Shown here: one piece after another, positions 4,308 through 59,965 of the stretch
Layout: each line of letters opens with the position of its first letter
How positions within the stretch are numbered: position 1 is the stretch's first letter
Translations under genes and position numbers: made by a program
The notes under the pieces: model-generated
Seen by the model: only the letters and a program-made list of their open reading frames with translations
What the model was told of the DNA's origin: nothing
The model's database searches: none
DNA from: Magallana gigas
Taxonomy: Eukaryota
Reading direction: 5' to 3'
Assembly (NCBI RefSeq): GCF_963853765.1
Contig: NC_088857.1
Span: 7,316,001-7,380,000, forward strand
DNA length: 64,000 nt

Positions 4308-5407
4308 TCAACCCTGTCCTCTGGTGACGTTCGTGATGACGTCAGTAAGGTTTGTTACTATGGATATGGGCGTGCTGGAAAGCACTGGCTTGTGGAGAAG
4401 ATTGTTATTTCCTCTTACTGAAAATTGAATTAAAAAAATTCGTTAGCACTTTTGTATCTAGAAATATGATTGTTAAAAAATCTTGACGACGTCATTGAGG
4501 ATATTCATTTTATAGCAAATTTTTTCCTAAAATGGACGAAACACTCAATTTTAACACTTTATACCGGATCATGCTGTCTACCAGTAGATATTGGCATTAA
4601 GTTGTCAAAAGATATACAAGCTAAGAAATTATTCACTGCAAATCACTCACCTAGATCATCTATCTTGTCGGACATGATCAGGGAGACCATTACCAAGAGG
4701 GCGCTGACCGTGAACATTGTCATGGAAACTATCATCACGGCGCGTGCTACGAATTTCTGTCGCTTGGTCCGAGTGTCCATATGAATATGTAGATCAGACC
4801 TCCTCGGGGTGTCTCTCACTAAAAACTCACTCAGTAAACTTCTGGCCACTGATGGGTCAATATAAAACACATTTTTATCGTGATAGTAGTCGGTGTCGGC
4901 CATGATTTCGATGTCATCATCAGAGAAGCTGATCCCGGTCCAGTGGGCCTGTCCCGCTCGCCACTGAGCTGTCCGAGCACTGCTCACGTTCTCTGGATGA
5001 CTGTGGTCCAAAGCTTTGTTAGTTCTCTCATACTGAATGTATTCTCGAGATTTGACACAGTTTTCACACAAGCACTCACCCTCCTCCACGATTACGTCTT
5101 GGTTTCCGTACGTTGCTCGCATAGCTTCTTCGCGGCAACTATCACAACTGCACTGTATTTCTTCATTATCAGCCGCTGGGTTTTCACCACCGAGTGCGCC
5201 TCCCCCCTCGCTGTCATTTGGTAGAAGAGGTTGATACGTTAAATAACTGTCGTCTGATAATTCCGAGATTTCCGTGTGTTGTCTCTCCAATTTCCCGCGC
5301 TCCTCCCGATCGGAGCCTCCTGATGACGTTGTATACGGGTACTTGTCGGAGTACGTCACACCGCTGGCGGTATCGTCGTCAGACAGTAACTCGCTGGTTT
5401 GACTCAT
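4308..5407 (-). CDS. Uncharacterised single-pass membrane protein (acidic N-terminal region with two CxCxxC motifs, C-terminal TM helix), 2 coding exons
   Basis: 254-aa ORF 4643-5407 with a GTGAGT donor at 4650 (exon 4651-5407). A polypyrimidine-CAG acceptor at 4418-4420 gives an in-frame exon 4308-4417 (…DDL|VRGNNNLLHKPVLSSTPISIVTNLTDVITNVTRGQG*). Hydrophobic stretch AVMIVSMTMFTVSALLVMVSLIM is preceded by basic RTKRQK. An acceptor near 5478 implies a 5' UTR intron. Confidence 0.8.
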
Positions 5408-7185
5408 TTTTACAGTTACACCTTGCAGTCCCTAGAACTTGTAGCGACTTCAAAACACCCGCAGCTCTCAAGCAATAACTGTAACGAAAATCAATTTGAA
5501 GCTGTTAATCTACCAGTGCCTGCGTCTGTAACGAATTTTTGATTTTTTAAAAGTGAAGTGCCGAGAGGAAAACACAAATATATAGCAGTGCACTTATGGA
5601 GCGTGTGTTGCTAAAACATGCCATTTCTTCAATTAGTTGTAAATATGTAATTATGGAAGATTGCCCATTCGCTAATCTTCAATCGGCTGATATTGCAAAG
5701 ATCCTTGCACAACAAATGAAGCTGTCCTTTAAGCTCTTAGGCTCGTTATATTTAACCATGAATGATTTCTCTAAATAGCTAAAACACCGTTACACCTGCG
5801 AGGCGATGCCTGTTTTTAACATATGAACTCAGGGATATACCATTAGATTCGATCTGTTGAGCTCTGTGCTAACTCGCCGTAAGCCTCTGAAAAATTCATT
5901 AGCTTCTTTTTGAAATATCTCGAGCAAAGAAGTTACAACGCTAAAATTAATCTCGAGAAAAGTATAACATCAAGGGATACCTTTTGTGGGCTCCGTTGCA
6001 TGCAGAATCGAGGAGATCGATTTCATTTCATTCCCTTGGGATTGTCTGCTGACTGATACAAGGGGAAGATCCTCTAAAAAGATAAAAGTAATAATTAAAG
6101 CCATTAATTACTTTGGATTATAATTATAGAAAAAATCTGTAATACGGAAGAATAAGGCAACAAGGATAAATATCTGAAACGTAAATGTAAAACAAAAGTC
6201 TAAATTCATTTTTAATTAGAGTTTGATATTCAGCCGTGCCTTTAGATTATGTTAGAATTATTTGTTGGATTTTGTTATAAAAAAAAACCCTCGAGGATTT
6301 CCAGATACCTCATAGCGTTAACACTGCCAAAACGCCTTGATTTCACGGTCACTGATTGTAGGACCGTGAGCGGAAACACGCTAAAATGTGGGTTTGTGTG
6401 TGTGGTTTTTTTTTTGGTACTCTCCTTCTCTCACTCGTAACCCGTAACTGTCTGATATCGTATCACTATCATAAGTGTCTTTTATTAATTTTCAATCTTA
6501 AGTTGAAAATGATTACATGACTGTCATGTAATCATTTTCAACTTTAGATTGAAAATTAATAAAAGACAAGTATCGTTTGCGTGTGGTCTTTTAATGCTTC
6601 ATGTTATTTGGAATATTCGCGTACAGGTACGTAGTAATTTATATTCACATATTAAAAATCATAAGAATATAAAACCCGACTTTCATAGCGAGAAAATAAG
6701 CCCAGCAGTGCCGCATTCTCATTACCGGTCTGTATCCATTGTTCTGTGCTGTTTTATTTCAGATACGACCGATTTTTTTTCTCCACGAGAATAAAACAAG
6801 TTATATCTCTCAATCGTAGACGGGTTTGAAGAGAGTTTCTCACGAAACTCATCAACTTAATATAAAACAAGTTCAGGCCTTGAACCTTTCCTTACTATAT
6901 CGCCTGAAATAAAAAGATTAGCTTCCACACCGTGATTAATCATTGATGATTACTGGAGGATTTCCTTCAGAAAGTAATGAATAGCAAATTCTCATGTCCA
7001 AGAAAACAGACCCGTCTGTCCATATATAGTGTCTTTGGAAGACAATGTCAAATTGCAATACTGGTATAAATATAGAATGTAAAGAATATAATGGACACTA
7101 AAGGTCAAATAAGGTTTTACTATATATATAAATATATAATTTAAAAATGATAAATATCCAGAATAAAATCACAAATTGATCCTAT

Positions 7186-7228
7186 TAACCGCAAACGTTT
7201 TCGCCATTCCTGGCTCTTCAGGCAGTTA
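7186..7228 (-). ncRNA. Minimal type I hammerhead ribozyme motif (mirror copy)
   Basis: Exact reverse complement of 7261-7303, located in the left arm of the palindrome. Confidence 0.75.
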
Positions 7229-7260
7229 TGTACAAATCGCCTTTATTTCGCATTTGTACA

Positions 7261-7303
7261 TAACTGCCTGAAGAGCCAGGAATGGCGAAAACGTTTGCGG
7301 TTA
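7261..7303 (+). ncRNA. Minimal type I hammerhead ribozyme motif
   Basis: TAACTGC-CTGAAGA-GCCA-GGAA-TGGC-GAAA-ACGT-T-T-GCGGTTA. Stem I is TAACTGC/GCGGTTA (one G-U pair), core CUGANGA, stem II GCCA/TGGC with a GGAA loop, then GAAA, a palindromic AACGTT stem III and a U-U cleavage position. Confidence 0.8.
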
Positions 7304-7374
7304 ATAGGATCAATTTGTGATTTTATTCTGGATATTTATCATTTTTAAATTATTTAAAACTGTGCCGATTTATT

Positions 7375-7505
7375 NNNNNNNNNNNNNNNNNNNNNNNNNN
7401 NNNNNNNNNNNNNNNNNNNNNNNNNNNNNNNNNNNNNNNNNNNNNNNNNNNNNNNNNNNNNNNNNNNNNNNNNNNNNNNNNNNNNNNNNNNNNNNNNNNN
7501 NNNNN
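7375..7505. other. Assembly gap (131 N)
   Basis: Run of N characters. Confidence 1.
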
Positions 7506-10500
7506 TGTGTGGTCAATAAACAGACCTTTATTTTATTGATATGACAATTTATGCTATTTGGTAATGACAAAATCAATAATATATTCTAGCTTTAAAATTT
7601 GAAAATTTTCCTTTTACAATGTTTGATGATGCCACATGAAGTACGGACTACTTGTGACAGAACACAAGAACATAGATATAAAAACCCACTTTTAAAAAAA
7701 ATGTCACCGCATGCAAGAACAATGAGAAATCGTTGCTAGGAAAAACCGCACCCGTCATGCAACCTTCTGTTACAGTAGGTTTTGAGCAATCATTTGTATT
7801 GTATCTTCAAGGAAAGAAGAGAAATAAAAAAAAAAAGCCGCGTTAAAGACATTAAGTATGGAGCTGTCAGAAATGCACTAGTTTTGACAACCGTGCGTAT
7901 AACTGCTGATCTAGATAAGCCAGAAAAGATGATTCATTTAAGTGAGTACGAACAAGCTTGGGACATATCCTTGGGCGAGAACTGAGTACTATAATTATTG
8001 TAGTGCTTCAATACTCGGTGAATCTTAACGAAGCTTGACAGAAACTGCACATGGGTGGGGAATTATGTCAGAATCTGTCAAGGTCTATAATACAGAAACT
8101 TGCACCGCCGGAAACTTGGAAATCAAATTTTTTTTATATCTCATGAATTTTATGTGCTTGTTACGAAAAATTTATTTTTGTTTTAATTTTGATTTGTAAA
8201 AATCGATCGAGTTTGTAAATTTTTTAATGAAATCAAAGTAGCCGCTAGCAAGGCATATTCAATCAATTTTGCTTGCAAGTTTATTGAGCGTATTATATTT
8301 CCACGGAATCGTCTTTTGGGAATTTTTTTTTTAAAATAATAAATAAATAGTTCTTGGTTTCTTTGCAAATCTTCAGGTTATCCATTTTTTTCTGTACAAA
8401 ATCAAAGGGCGGTTTGAATTTTTCATATTTTCTCGGCATTTTTACGCCATTTCCATTCCATTCCGTGGCATCTGTTACTCTTATCAACATGATGGTATCA
8501 TTTTATATCAATACAATCTCATATGCATTATTATGGCGTCTAGATATTCAAGGAGGTTTATATACGCAGGTTCGAGGGTGTTTGAGCATCTTTTTATAGA
8601 ATCCGATTTCATTTAACATTGATGATACCCCAAGTGTTTGGACACCTCTCACACATGTATATATTTACACATCCGCTATTCCATGGGCTAATCATTAGAC
8701 TTAAATTCATAAAAGTATAAAATATTGACGAGAATGATATAATTCCAAGTAAATGAAAATGAAAATTATTGATTCCTCGCAAGCCGCGGCTTTATCTATA
8801 AGTACATATTGGTCATTTTAACGACTCTGGGGAGCTCGTGACATCAAGATGAGGACACACAAGAAAGCAATCAACAATAAAAGAAAACCATACAGACCGA
8901 TCCCTGAGTGTATTTTCTGCTTCATGAATTGTTTCATTTTACTTTTTATAAAACTGAAATTTGACAAATGCAGCTACCGATATCATTTGCTTGAAAAAAA
9001 AACCCGCTGTATTTATAAGTTCTATCAGCAGATTTAATTCATAGTAACAATTACATACTAACGAAACAAACACTCTTCAAACGCAAATTGTCAAAACAGT
9101 ATTTAAAAAGTAAATACATTGCTAGTATAGTTGAAACAAAATGTAGTTTAATTGAAGAAATAAGTTAAAATACGAACATAAAAAGGGTCTTATTGCATTT
9201 TAAGGAATTAAGGGTTACACTAAATAGAGACCATACCTTAACAAGAATTGCCACTGGTAGAATTTGAAAAAGTTCCGGTAAATCATAGTCAACCAATCTC
9301 TGTGCTCACAGTGATATACTACCGACACAGTCAAGATATGTTTAGAACATTTCACCGTATTGATTGGAGTCGGCAACAAACAGCGTATTGTTACAAGTAA
9401 TCACGTGACGTTTCCCGGCATTCCACCGCCATTCTACGAGCTCCGTATCTTTTCCACCCCTTGTTTTTGTATATAGTATTGATTCCTTTAACTTTTTTAA
9501 AAAGATAACAAAAATCAATTTATCGAATGAAATGTAGTTTATCCTTTCAACCGAAGGAAAGTCTAGCAATTAACTGTCCTAACGAACGACTACTAACGCT
9601 GATAGCACTAAAGCGGCGATTTGCGTTCTGTGATACCAAAGGACAAATGTTCACGCACCATTCATCAAGAGAAACAGTGTATTGTTAGCGTCGGTATTAC
9701 TACAACATTATTTCTATTATCGCGGTAATCGCTTTGCTATTTTAATTAGACTCACGCTTTTAACTGTATCTGAAATAGAAACTTCAAAGAATATCTTAAT
9801 GAATTAAAAAGAGAATATTATTGTTTATTTCTACAACCTTAAGTCAAATAAATTTATGACTTAATAAAGGGTGCATTCTATAGATGTCGCACAAGTATTT
9901 TCTTTTTCTTTTGGTTCCTTTTAAAAGATTTTGTCATAAAATGATTTACATACACAGAATAAAGGCTGCAAGACTAAAATTCCAAATTTCTGGTTGTATC
10001 GAACACCATGTTATTGTTTTGATAGGTTAATCTTTGTGAATGCAAAAGACATTGATTTCCCATTACAGGACATACTTTTATCGTCGTCATTAATATTCGC
10101 AATGTTGATATTAGCGGAACTTTTTTTTGTAAAATTGCGTAAAAAAAAATACTAAAAATACTCTCTAAACAATATCGTGAAATGGGTAGCTTTTAGTGAT
10201 ACAGCTTGTTGTCATCAGATGCGCGGAATGAGTCAAATTATCGTCGTATTTAAATGAAAAATCTAATAACTACAGGTACTTCAAGTGGATAAACAAGTTG
10301 TTTATGCATTTCAAGGTGTGGCGAAGGCAAATCAAATTTTACAATATGCTACCAGCTAATAGAAAATATATATATAGACAAATAAAGAAAAACGTTAGAA
10401 TGCTTAAAATATTTTTGGTAAATAACAGGACATCCATTACATGTATTTGATAGAGTAGACTAAAAGGGAGTGAAAAAGAGGTCCATAGGTCACACTGTTC

Positions 10501-59891: not shown

Positions 59892-59965
59892 TGGCTGGAC
59901 CGGGAATCGAACCGGGGACCCCCTGTATCTATAGCCAGGAGCTCTACCACTGAGCAACCCAGGCC
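59892..59965 (-). mobile_element. tRNA-derived SINE head / tRNA pseudogene
   Basis: GGCCTGGGTTGCTCAGTGGTAGAGC…GGTTCGATTCCCGGTCCAGCCA has A and B boxes and a D-arm, but the acceptor stem is mispaired and the anticodon loop is oversized. Confidence 0.7.

What the first reader, a model, noticed from the sequence alone, without database searches (positions are those of the whole stretch)
7136..7353. Back-to-back hammerhead ribozymes in a perfect 102-bp-arm palindrome (Penelope pLTR or retrozyme signature)
Seen in the sequence: each arm holds a complete minimal type I hammerhead (stem I TAACTGC/GCGGTTA, CUGAAGA core, GCCA-GGAA-TGGC stem II, GAAA, palindromic AACGTT stem III), so transcription from either direction would contain a self-cleaving motif. 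Established: minimal type I hammerheads with short palindromic stem III, which are thought to act as dimers, mark Penelope-like element pseudo-LTRs and small non-autonomous retrozymes that can yield circular RNAs in metazoans, and inverted pLTR arrangements occur in Penelope elements. Inference: this is the end of a young Penelope element or retrozyme whose remainder lies in the adjacent gap. The identical arms would form a 102-bp dsRNA competing with ribozyme folding, a possible built-in silencing switch. Position 17 is U, a weaker cleavage context.
Basis: partly seen in the sequence, partly recalled or inferred. Interest (0 to 1): 0.75.

Follow-up and report, generated by a model that had tools for sequence, protein, structure and literature searches.

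The report
Inverted Penelope retroelement ends with hammerheads
The perfect palindrome is real, but it is an ordinary, well-described insertion scar: two about 100-base 3' ends of one young Penelope-like jumping element of an oyster, each with the element's own small hammerhead ribozyme motif, joined head-to-head in TA-rich DNA.

Summary
Perfect 102-nt arms (7136-7237 and 7252-7353) flank a 14-nt spacer, and each arm holds a complete minimal type-I hammerhead motif that reads outward.

In other copies the arm is the last 101 nt of a young Penelope-like element (PLE). [quoted passage not shown] The genome holds at least 91 copies of this ribozyme box, and a reversed control pattern gave 0. Paired copies among the longer ones also lie head-to-head, with inner breakpoints anywhere from 39 nt to 3.2 kb. 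The right arm carries the PLE-specific "tail" and the left arm does not. The 16 other pairs I checked follow the same one-tail rule.

Three points of the reading fail:
- No remainder of the element lies in the N run. The element's 5' side faces the centre, so at most the end of the tail is masked.
- It is not a retrozyme, because no tandem direct copies were found.
- A read-through transcript holds one sense and one antisense ribozyme, so the ribozymes cannot form the dimer. It folds instead into a hairpin of -154 kcal/mol.

Rfam's hammerhead models do not score the motif. Three base pairs covary across four sister families.

The scan found the same structure before on other DNA of this genome (s1-385405). 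This is a known kind of feature. One modest extra is that short copies share a sharply defined 5' end just upstream of the ribozyme.

The parts
7121..7136 (.). TA-rich left flank, a short (TA)n-like run: the target sequence
   Evidence: Read. Most other copies of the family end directly in (TA)n. (TA)n is a published preferred target of PLEs with the CX2-5CxxC linker (PMC8557442).
7137..7237 (-). Left arm: last 101 nt of the PLE 3' UTR, with the element's sense on the - strand, its 3' end at 7137, and no tail
   Evidence: The arm is 99-100% identical to the 3' end of copies that carry the RT + GIY-YIG ORF.
7186..7228 (-). Minimal type-I hammerhead motif of the left arm, with the predicted cut between 7193 and 7192 on the - strand
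   Evidence: Descriptor hit on the - strand. It is the mirror image of the right-arm motif.
7238..7251 (.). 14-nt filler at the head-to-head junction, not part of the element
   Evidence: It does not match the sequence upstream of the arm in longer copies. Other short pairs have a 0-27-nt junction filler.
7252..7352 (+). Right arm: last 101 nt of the PLE 3' UTR, sense on the + strand, 3' end at 7352
7261..7303 (+). Minimal type-I hammerhead motif of the right arm, with the predicted cut between 7296 and 7297
   Evidence: The same motif with allowed variation is seen in sibling copies, and with covariation in sister families.
7353..7374 (+). First 22 nt of the PLE tail extension, present on this arm only. 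It runs into the N mask at 7375, which was not read or inferred
   Evidence: The same 22 nt follow the element end in about half of the family's ends, where the tail is about 41 nt long and is followed by (TA)n. All 16 other pairs have exactly one tailed end. Tails are a published PLE signature (PMC8557442, PMC11167929).

Best explanation
Window 7137-7374(+) is one insertion of a young Penelope-like retrotransposon (PLE) with a C-terminal endonuclease and a Neptune-like linker. The insertion consists only of two inverted copies of the element's last 101 nt, joined 5'-to-5' (head-to-head) through 14 nt of filler, inside TA-rich DNA. Each arm is the pLTR-equivalent 3' module: a minimal type-I hammerhead motif, then about 50 nt up to the site where reverse transcription starts. 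The right arm also carries the optional tail.

How it arose (inferred from family anatomy and published biochemistry): the element's RT/GIY-YIG protein cuts AT-rich DNA and primes cDNA on the cut ends. One cDNA starts at the distal start site and gains the tail. The other end lacks the tail. The two antisense cDNAs, or one cDNA that snaps back on itself, are joined at their 3' ends, which makes a head-to-head palindrome. Here copying reached only about 100 nt, a preferred end point just upstream of the ribozyme.

The copy has no ORF and was dead on arrival. The hammerhead is a conserved cargo of the element and is probably protein-assisted and dimer-dependent. At this locus it has no plausible activity, because any read-through RNA folds into a perfect 100-bp hairpin.
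For: Shown here:
- The arm occurs in at least 50 places at 96-100% identity.
- 91 ribozyme boxes of this family match with at most 1 mismatch, against 0 for the control.
- Whenever two copies are close, the order is - then +, so their 3' ends face outward.
- Long pairs L031, L032 and L033 hold divergent ORFs with RVT_1 and GIY-YIG above Pfam's cut-offs.
- The ORF also shows a DKG motif and a CX4CxxC linker.
- Inner breakpoints vary from 39 to 3217 nt from the 3' end. Pairs can be symmetric (1740/1734, 483/483, many near 100/100) or asymmetric (2793/417, 1356/503, 244/170).
- The element ends in (TA)n or in a 41-nt tail followed by (TA)n.
- Exactly one end is tailed in 16 of 16 other pairs and in the window.
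- In 8 of 8 clearly asymmetric pairs the tail is on the longer arm.
- The ribozyme sits at the same 3' UTR position in a sister family with 65% protein identity.
- Compensatory changes keep the ribozyme pairs: 2.1-1.1 C-G to U-A, 10.4-11.4 A-U to C-G, and 15.2-16.2 A-U to G-C, the last keeping the 4-nt palindrome.

Published:
- Minimal hammerheads in PLE pLTRs, with pairs on opposite strands 100-700 bp apart (PMC4209133).
- Inverted 5'-truncated copies, one-sided tails and (TA)n targets (PMC8557442).
- Head-to-head palindromes read as self-priming (PMC3846280).
- A PLE protein that cuts and extends both DNA strands, starts reverse transcription at two internal sites that define the tail, and assists the ribozyme (PMC11167929).
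Against:
- Rfam hammerhead models do not score the motif.
- Cleavage is untested. U17 in a UUU triplet is a poor context (established hammerhead enzymology, from my own knowledge).
- No direct pLTR or partial tandem was seen for this family, although that is the textbook PLE arrangement.
- The covariation rests on only four sequence families.
- The mechanism (two-strand priming versus snap-back) is inferred, not shown.
Confidence: 0.92

Rival explanations
1. Fold-back assembly artefact: only one arm exists in the animal, and the assembler mirrored it next to a gap.
For: The structure lies 22 nt from an N run. PLE inverted repeats are known to trouble assemblies (PMC8557442). I could not lay reads.
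Against: - The same short head-to-head pairs, with different junction fillers, lie at 9 or more other places inside chromosome-sized contigs without any N. They also occur in three sister families.
- The arms are asymmetric in the biologically expected way, with a tail on one end only, which a mirror artefact would not produce.
- The genome copy of this place fetched as L004/L008 contains no N at all (count only, letters not read). The N run is therefore a mask and not an assembly gap.
- 19 runs from 9 studies hold at least half of the sampled words of 6700-7374. This is weak support, because the arm words are repeated in the genome.
Confidence: 0.04
2. Retrozyme: a small non-autonomous tandem repeat with hammerheads that is transcribed, self-cleaves and forms circular RNA.
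For: It has the same kind of ribozyme. Animal retrozymes are reported to derive from PLE pLTRs (bioRxiv 10.64898/2026.07.22.740005). The roughly 100-nt module does spread without an ORF, both as solo arms and as pairs.
Against: - No tandem direct copies. Among the 91 boxes, all close neighbours are in inverted orientation.
- A palindrome yields one sense ribozyme per transcript, so there is no unit to excise.
- The arms are 96-100% identical to the 3' UTR of ORF-bearing copies.
Confidence: 0.02
3. DNA transposon or MITE whose terminal inverted repeats contain a hammerhead-like string by chance.
For: The pattern is a - arm on the left and a + arm on the right, with spacing from 0 to 4.5 kb. This looks like terminal inverted repeats with internal deletions. 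The relaxed motif is expected by chance roughly 90 times in 564 Mb (extrapolated).
Against: - The interior is two diverging, mutually inverted copies of one RT + GIY-YIG ORF, not a transposase.
- The inner breakpoints vary while the outer ends are fixed, which is 5' truncation.
- The ribozyme covaries across sister families.
Confidence: 0.01
4. The palindrome has been taken over by the host as a hairpin-RNA gene, a source of miRNA, endo-siRNA or piRNA that silences the PLE family.
For: A read-through RNA folds into a perfect hairpin of -153.6 kcal/mol, z = -32. Six RNA runs hold 40-68% of the sampled words of the locus. Small-RNA silencing of PLEs is documented in rotifers (PMC3846280).
Against: - There is no evidence of transcription through the locus. 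RNA runs may hold it as DNA.
- The Rfam miRNA hits are all far below the gathering scores and simply reward any long hairpin.
- The copy is as young as its siblings, so no conservation can be shown.
- The same structure arises as an insertion by-product at many loci.
Confidence: 0.05

Closest known systems
Canonical endonuclease-containing Penelope-like elements, Neptune-type (Arkhipova 2006; Craig et al. 2021, PMC8557442)
   Same: - A single ORF with RT, then a CX2-5CxxC linker, then a C-terminal GIY-YIG domain.
- A hammerhead near the 3' end.
- Heavy 5' truncation and adjacent inverted copies.
- A one-sided tail of 30-40 bp (41 nt here).
- (TA)n targets.
   Different: In the copies sampled, this family shows only head-to-head pairs and solo ends, with no direct pLTRs or partial tandems. 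The window copy consists of nothing but two 101-nt ends.
Minimal hammerheads of metazoan PLEs (Cervera & de la Pena 2014, PMC4209133)
   Same: - Type I, with an open helix I.
- G10.1-C11.1 is present.
- A very short helix III whose inner bases form a palindrome (AACGUU), which implies action as a dimer.
- Pairs on opposite strands about 100 bp apart were reported there.
   Different: Helix II is the canonical 4 bp, without the extra unpaired base after A9 that is typical of PLE minimal hammerheads. Helix I is 7 bp. The cleavage triplet is UUU. No Rfam model scores it.
Poseidon element of Anolis (PAc) studied in vitro (Frangieh et al. 2024, PMC11167929)
   Same: It supplies the mechanism used in this report: cutting and extension of both DNA strands at AT-rich sites, two internal RT start sites that define the tail, and a protein-assisted ribozyme that is not needed for insertion.
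   Different: It belongs to a different clade and host. There the ribozyme overlaps the ORF start in tandem units. Here it lies in the 3' UTR, about 50 nt from the end.
Animal non-LTR retrozymes
   Same: The ribozyme type is related and they probably originate from PLE pLTRs.
   Different: Retrozymes are tandem direct repeats that release circular RNA. This is an inverted pair with a single sense ribozyme per strand.

Membership tests
Penelope-like element (EN+, C-terminal GIY-YIG) | One ORF with a reverse transcriptase followed by a GIY-YIG endonuclease | tested here: met
   RVT_1 scores 34.3 bits (cut-off 29.6) and GIY-YIG scores 30.7 bits (cut-off 22.6) in L032:3143-5431. The same domains are found in L031 and L033. 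This holds for sibling copies that share the arm at 98-100% identity. The window copy itself has no ORF.
Penelope-like element (EN+, C-terminal GIY-YIG) | DKG motif in the RT, and a CX2-5CxxC linker before the endonuclease (Neptune/Nematis type) | tested here: met
   Read directly in the translation...EADKGG... and ...KKCGDPRCGTCAY... lie upstream of the GIY/YIG block. No phylogeny was made, so the clade name is provisional.
Penelope-like element (EN+, C-terminal GIY-YIG) | Variable 5' truncation with an adjacent inverted copy (head-to-head) | tested here: met
   There are at least 20 head-to-head pairs, with arm lengths of 39-3217 nt.
Penelope-like element (EN+, C-terminal GIY-YIG) | [quoted passage not shown] | tested here: met
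   A 41-nt tail lies on exactly one end in 16 of 16 pairs. In the window its first 22 nt follow the right arm only.
Penelope-like element (EN+, C-terminal GIY-YIG) | AT-rich or (TA)n insertion sites | tested here: met
   (TA)n follows nearly every end. The window's left flank is a short TA run.
Penelope-like element (EN+, C-terminal GIY-YIG) | Direct pseudo-LTRs from partial tandem copies | tested here: not met
   L032 has no direct self-match, and no + + or - - neighbours lie within a few kb among the 91 boxes. A related family with 48% protein identity does form an inverted-plus-tandem array (C4:7807391-7817983). The literature allows inverted-only arrangements (PMC8557442, PMC3846280).
Hammerhead ribozyme, type I | Catalytic core CUGANGA ... 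GAAA with G10.1-C11.1, A15.1-U16.1 and a non-G at position 17 | tested here: met
   Core variation among copies is confined to N7 (A/U) and loop 2.
Hammerhead ribozyme, type I | Helices supported by compensatory changes in relatives | tested here: met
   - 2.1-1.1: C-G to U-A, family A versus B.
- 10.4-11.4: A-U to C-G, family A versus D.
- 15.2-16.2: A-U to G-C, keeping the palindrome.

Only four families were compared, so support is modest.
Hammerhead ribozyme, type I | Match to the curated covariance models (Rfam Hammerhead_1 and relatives) | tested here: not met
   No hammerhead hit at the gathering threshold, or at E<=10 on the palindrome or on a single arm. Minimal PLE hammerheads with almost no helix III may simply fit these models poorly (inference, not tested).
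Hammerhead ribozyme, type I | Self-cleavage 3' of position 17 | not testable with these tools
Published PLE minimal hammerheads cleave weakly, as dimers or with the element's protein (PMC4209133, PMC11167929).
Retrozyme | Tandem head-to-tail repeats, each with a hammerhead | tested here: not met
   every close pair is inverted.

The most novel reading that the evidence does not exclude
The 101-nt arm is not a random truncation but a complete unit. Three observations support this.

1. Defined 5' end. About 24 of roughly 52 measured arms of this family, including solo arms, begin within an 8-nt window (A-T-T-T-G-T-A-C-A). This window lies at an initiator-like TCATTT, 9-16 nt upstream of the ribozyme box. 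Two junctions carry 6-14 extra A/T, as from RT run-off.

2. Sister families. Short pairs in three other ribozyme families have similarly small box-to-box distances (26-57 nt), which suggests breaks at the corresponding place (coordinates only; their junction sequences could not be fetched).

3. Conserved upstream motif. A CRE-like TGACGTCA lies 60-90 nt upstream in two families.

Together these would mean that the pLTR promoter fires just 5' of the hammerhead, and that pLTR-only RNAs (transcription start site to RT start site) are frequent retrotransposition templates.

In addition, exactly one end is tailed in 17 of 17 pairs, and the tail is always on the longer arm. This would show an obligate asymmetry between a primary and a secondary cDNA in PLE integration.
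Probability: 0.3. Interest if true: 0.45.

Novelty: already known. Interest (0 to 1): 0.2.

Why it matters
For the genome, this is one more dead-on-arrival fragment of an active oyster retrotransposon family. It needs masking as a repeat and should not be annotated as a ribozyme gene or a miRNA.

For PLE biology, the family is a clean natural data set:
- it is young;
- it has dozens of head-to-head pairs;
- it follows a strict one-tail rule;
- its short copies have a sharp 5' end next to the hammerhead.

That data set could help decide between two-strand priming and snap-back models of PLE integration. It could also help locate the pLTR transcription start. These are refinements of known biology and not a new kind of system.

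Tried and rejected
1. Rfam at the gathering threshold on the whole window, then at E<=10 on the palindrome and on one arm. No hammerhead family was hit. The sub-threshold miRNA hits (MIR6274 at 68.9 bits against a gathering score of 80, and others) only reflect the long hairpin and were dismissed.

2. Single-arm RNA folding. The hammerhead fold is no more stable than shuffled sequence (z about -0.3). This is expected for a dimer-dependent minimal motif, so it is uninformative.

There is therefore no read support, no RNA 5'/3' ends and no test of the palindrome at this locus. Later folds and scripts used 7151-7340 only.

Families C and D are known only from the 27-28-nt matches listed.

5. TIR-transposon/MITE reading: rejected on the ORF content and the variable inner breakpoints.

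6. Arms defined by hammerhead cleavage: rejected. The cut would leave 56-nt arms, and only one 64-nt arm was seen.

7. Pfam scan of the nearest sizeable ORF (4643-5407, - strand): no family. No tandem repeats in 5000-10000.

8. The N run at 7375-7506 was not read, filled or inferred. The loci L004 and L008, which are the window's own place, were excluded from every script apart from a count of N. The length of the tail was learned from other insertions of the element. I make no statement about the masked letters.

L032 served only as a coordinate ruler.
Full report
**Observation**

The repeat finder reports arms 7133-7237 and 7252-7356, 105 nt long and 99% complementary, with 14 nt between them. 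The perfectly complementary part is 7136-7237 and 7252-7353.

Each arm holds a full minimal type-I hammerhead motif. On the + strand of the right arm the parts are:
- helix I 5' strand: 7261-7267
- CUGAAGA box: 7268-7274
- helix II, GCCA-GGAA-UGGC: 7275-7286
- GAAA: 7287-7290
- ACGU: 7291-7294
- U16.1: 7295
- U17: 7296
- helix I 3' strand: 7297-7303

The mirror copy is on the - strand at 7186-7228. In both arms the ribozyme's sense points away from the centre.

A descriptor with base-pairing rules finds only these two sites in the window, against 0.01 hits per shuffled window.

Rfam does not recognise the motif at its gathering scores, nor at E<=10 on the palindrome or on a single arm. Its only hits are sub-threshold miRNA hairpin models that score the palindrome as such.

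**What the arm is**

The 105-nt arm has at least 50 matches at 96-100% identity in the window's own genome (564 Mb, 29 contigs). The 33-nt ribozyme core has 91 matches with at most one mismatch, against 0 for the reversed control. Run labels and earlier notes of the scan call it an oyster.

Wherever two copies are close, the left one is on the - strand and the right one on the + strand. The distance between them ranges from a few nt to 4.5 kb.

The long pairs contain two diverging copies of one ORF. That ORF has RVT_1 and GIY-YIG domains above Pfam's cut-offs. The 762-aa frame of L032 also shows the DKG motif and a CX4CxxC linker ahead of the endonuclease. From the literature and my own knowledge, an RT fused to a C-terminal GIY-YIG endonuclease defines endonuclease-containing Penelope-like elements (PLEs). 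The linker is the Neptune/Nematis trait (PMC8557442).

The ORF stops 268 nt before the element's end, and the ribozyme lies about 50 nt from that end.

**Family anatomy**

I measured arms against the longest copy, L032:2483-5699, which I used only as a ruler. The outer ends are fixed and the inner ends vary from 39 to 3217 nt. This is 5' truncation of copies arranged head-to-head.

Some pairs are symmetric:
- 1740/1734 nt
- 483/483 nt
- many near 100/100 nt

Others are asymmetric:
- 2793/417 nt
- 1356/503 nt
- 244/170 nt
- 103/64 nt

Only four copies keep the 5' 400 nt. I saw no direct pLTR in this family.

Outside the element end there is either (TA)n directly, or a conserved 41-nt extension followed by (TA)n. 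This extension is the PLE tail of the literature.

In all 16 pairs with both ends readable, exactly one end has the tail. If the ends were independent this would have a probability of at most 2^-16. In all 8 clearly asymmetric pairs the tail is on the longer arm.

**The window copy**

The element proper spans 7137-7237 (- strand) and 7252-7352 (+ strand), 101 nt each. The extra a/t pair at 7136/7353 is chance.

The left arm abuts a short TA run. The right arm is followed by the first 22 nt of the tail (7353-7374), which then runs into the N mask. I did not read, fill or infer the masked letters. The window's own place (L004, L008) was left out of all scripts apart from a count, which showed that those loci hold no N. 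So the N run is a mask rather than an assembly gap.

Both arms end with their natural 3' ends outward, so nothing of the element's body can lie in the N run. A missing 5' part would be at the centre, where there are only 14 nt of filler that match nothing upstream in longer copies.

The copy has no ORF and was dead on arrival. Its arms are identical to each other and to several other copies. Several sibling ORFs are open. The family is therefore young.

**Is the hammerhead real?**

Within the family, the only changes seen in the core are at N7 (A/U), in loop 2, and a G-U to A-U change in helix I.

A sister family with 65% protein identity (family B) has the motif at the same place in a 3' UTR that is otherwise much diverged.

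A pattern for box + helix II + GAAA has 343 genome hits against 0 for the control. The hits fall into four sequence families. Between families, three pairs change on both sides and stay paired:
- 2.1-1.1: C-G to U-A, family A versus B
- 10.4-11.4: A-U to C-G, family A versus D
- 15.2-16.2: A-U to G-C, which keeps the four inner bases of helix III self-complementary (ACGU versus GCGC)

This is the published signature of metazoan PLE hammerheads, which are thought to act as dimers (PMC4209133). The evidence is modest, because it rests on four families and I could not fetch more.

Activity is untested. Published PLE minimal hammerheads cleave poorly on their own. One was shown to need the element's protein and to be dispensable for insertion in vitro (PMC11167929).

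U17 in a UUU triplet is a weak context (my own knowledge of hammerhead enzymology). Family B has A17, and also an extra U between helix II and G12.

**Consequences of the palindrome**

A transcript through the locus contains one sense and one antisense ribozyme. It cannot form the sense-sense dimer. It folds into a perfect hairpin of -153.6 kcal/mol, against about -12 kcal/mol for the ribozyme fold.

A role as a silencing switch is speculation. There is no evidence of transcription, and the structure arises as a by-product at many loci.

**Mechanism (inferred)**

Published work shows that a PLE protein cuts AT-rich DNA on both strands and extends both. It starts reverse transcription at two adjacent internal sites whose interval is the tail (PMC11167929). 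Head-to-head junctions with palindromes have been read as self-priming (PMC3846280).

The data here fit a primary cDNA and a shorter secondary copy. The primary starts at the distal site, so it is tailed and is the longer arm. The secondary is untailed and may be primed on the other strand or made by snap-back. The two are joined at their 3' ends, with or without filler. I cannot tell the two routes apart.

**An extra observation**

Short copies do not end at random. About 24 of roughly 52 measured arms, solo arms included, start 98-108 nt from the end by the ruler. That ruler runs 1 nt into the tail, so the window's arms read 102 there and are 101 nt long.

In eight short pairs, all arm starts fall in one 8-nt stretch. 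This stretch lies at an initiator-like TCATTT that contains the palindrome TGTACA, 9-16 nt upstream of the box. Two junctions carry 6-14 extra A/T.

Equally short pairs exist in families B, C and D, with 26-57 nt between the boxes.

Hammerhead cleavage cannot explain this, because it would give 56-nt arms. Two explanations remain possible. One is a discrete RNA 5' end, for example the pLTR promoter's start site with conserved TGACGTCA motifs 60-90 nt upstream. The other is an RT stop next to the protein-bound ribozyme. This needs RNA 5'-end mapping.

**Limits**

- The locus is therefore not verified independently of the assembly. In its favour are the same architecture with different fillers at 9 or more other N-free loci, the one-sided tail, and 19 runs from 9 studies that hold most sampled words of 6700-7374 (weak, because the arm is repeated).

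**Comparison and verdict**

Every feature matches published descriptions of endonuclease-containing PLEs and their hammerheads (PMC4209133, PMC8557442, PMC3846280, PMC11167929). The scan had already reached the same reading for another 108-bp palindrome of this genome (s1-385405). I arrived at it independently before looking that up.

The finding is real and correctly attributed to a Penelope element. It is not a retrozyme, has no hidden remainder, and is an already known kind of structure. Interest is low, with a small premium for the sharply defined 5' end and the strict one-tail rule.

Noticed in passing
loci L001-L048 (family A pairs), for example L031, L032, L033, L034, L036: Every head-to-head pair has exactly one end with the 41-nt tail (16 of 16, plus the window). 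In all 8 clearly asymmetric pairs the tail is on the longer arm. This suggests a fixed primary/secondary asymmetry in PLE integration.
   Followed up: partly
window 7252-7260 and its mirror 7229-7237; junctions in L007, L020, L022, L023, L024, L037, L043: Arm 5' ends of short copies cluster in one 8-nt stretch, at an initiator-like TCATTT that contains the palindrome TGTACA, just upstream of the ribozyme. Two junctions carry 6-14 extra A/T. Similarly short pairs occur in ribozyme families B, C and D.
   Followed up: partly
L069:2371-2640 and L068-L082 (family B, 65% protein identity): The sister PLE family's hammerhead has an extra U between helix II and G12 (GGC-U-GAAA) and has A17. It is present in dozens of copies, so it is either a tolerated core variant or a family-wide inactive motif.
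   Followed up: no
L032:5540-5600 and L069:2480-2540 (3' UTRs, alignment A2): CRE-like TGACGTCA/TGACGT motifs are conserved between families A and B, 60-90 nt upstream of the ribozyme, in otherwise diverged UTRs. They may be pLTR promoter elements.
   Followed up: no
L066:159-221: A different minimal hammerhead lies next to a decayed PLE copy. It has a bulged A after A9, helix II GGGA/UCCC, an AAUU helix III and U17. This is the classic PLE minimal-hammerhead architecture.
   Followed up: no
G000:C4:7807391-7817983: A PLE family with 48% protein identity forms one inverted copy followed by three tandem copies with a 3.79-kb period. This is the textbook inverted-plus-tandem PLE array, which family A lacks.
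   Followed up: no
window 6500-6544: A perfect 22-nt-arm palindrome with a 1-nt spacer, 600 nt left of the finding. It is unrelated in sequence to the PLE arm.
   Followed up: no
window 59892-59964 (-): A tRNA-like sequence. Rfam's tRNA model scores 34.3 bits (gathering score 29). ARAGORN calls an undetermined tRNA with a 4-nt anticodon. It is possibly a tRNA pseudogene or a tRNA-derived SINE head.
   Followed up: no
window 4643-5407 (-): A 254-aa ATG ORF in a GC-richer patch (0.48 against about 0.33 around it) with no Pfam family.
   Followed up: partly
window 7375-7506 versus loci L004/L008: The loci cut from the genome at the window's own place contain no N (count only). So the N run in the window is a deliberate mask, not an assembly gap. 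The letters were not read.
   Followed up: no
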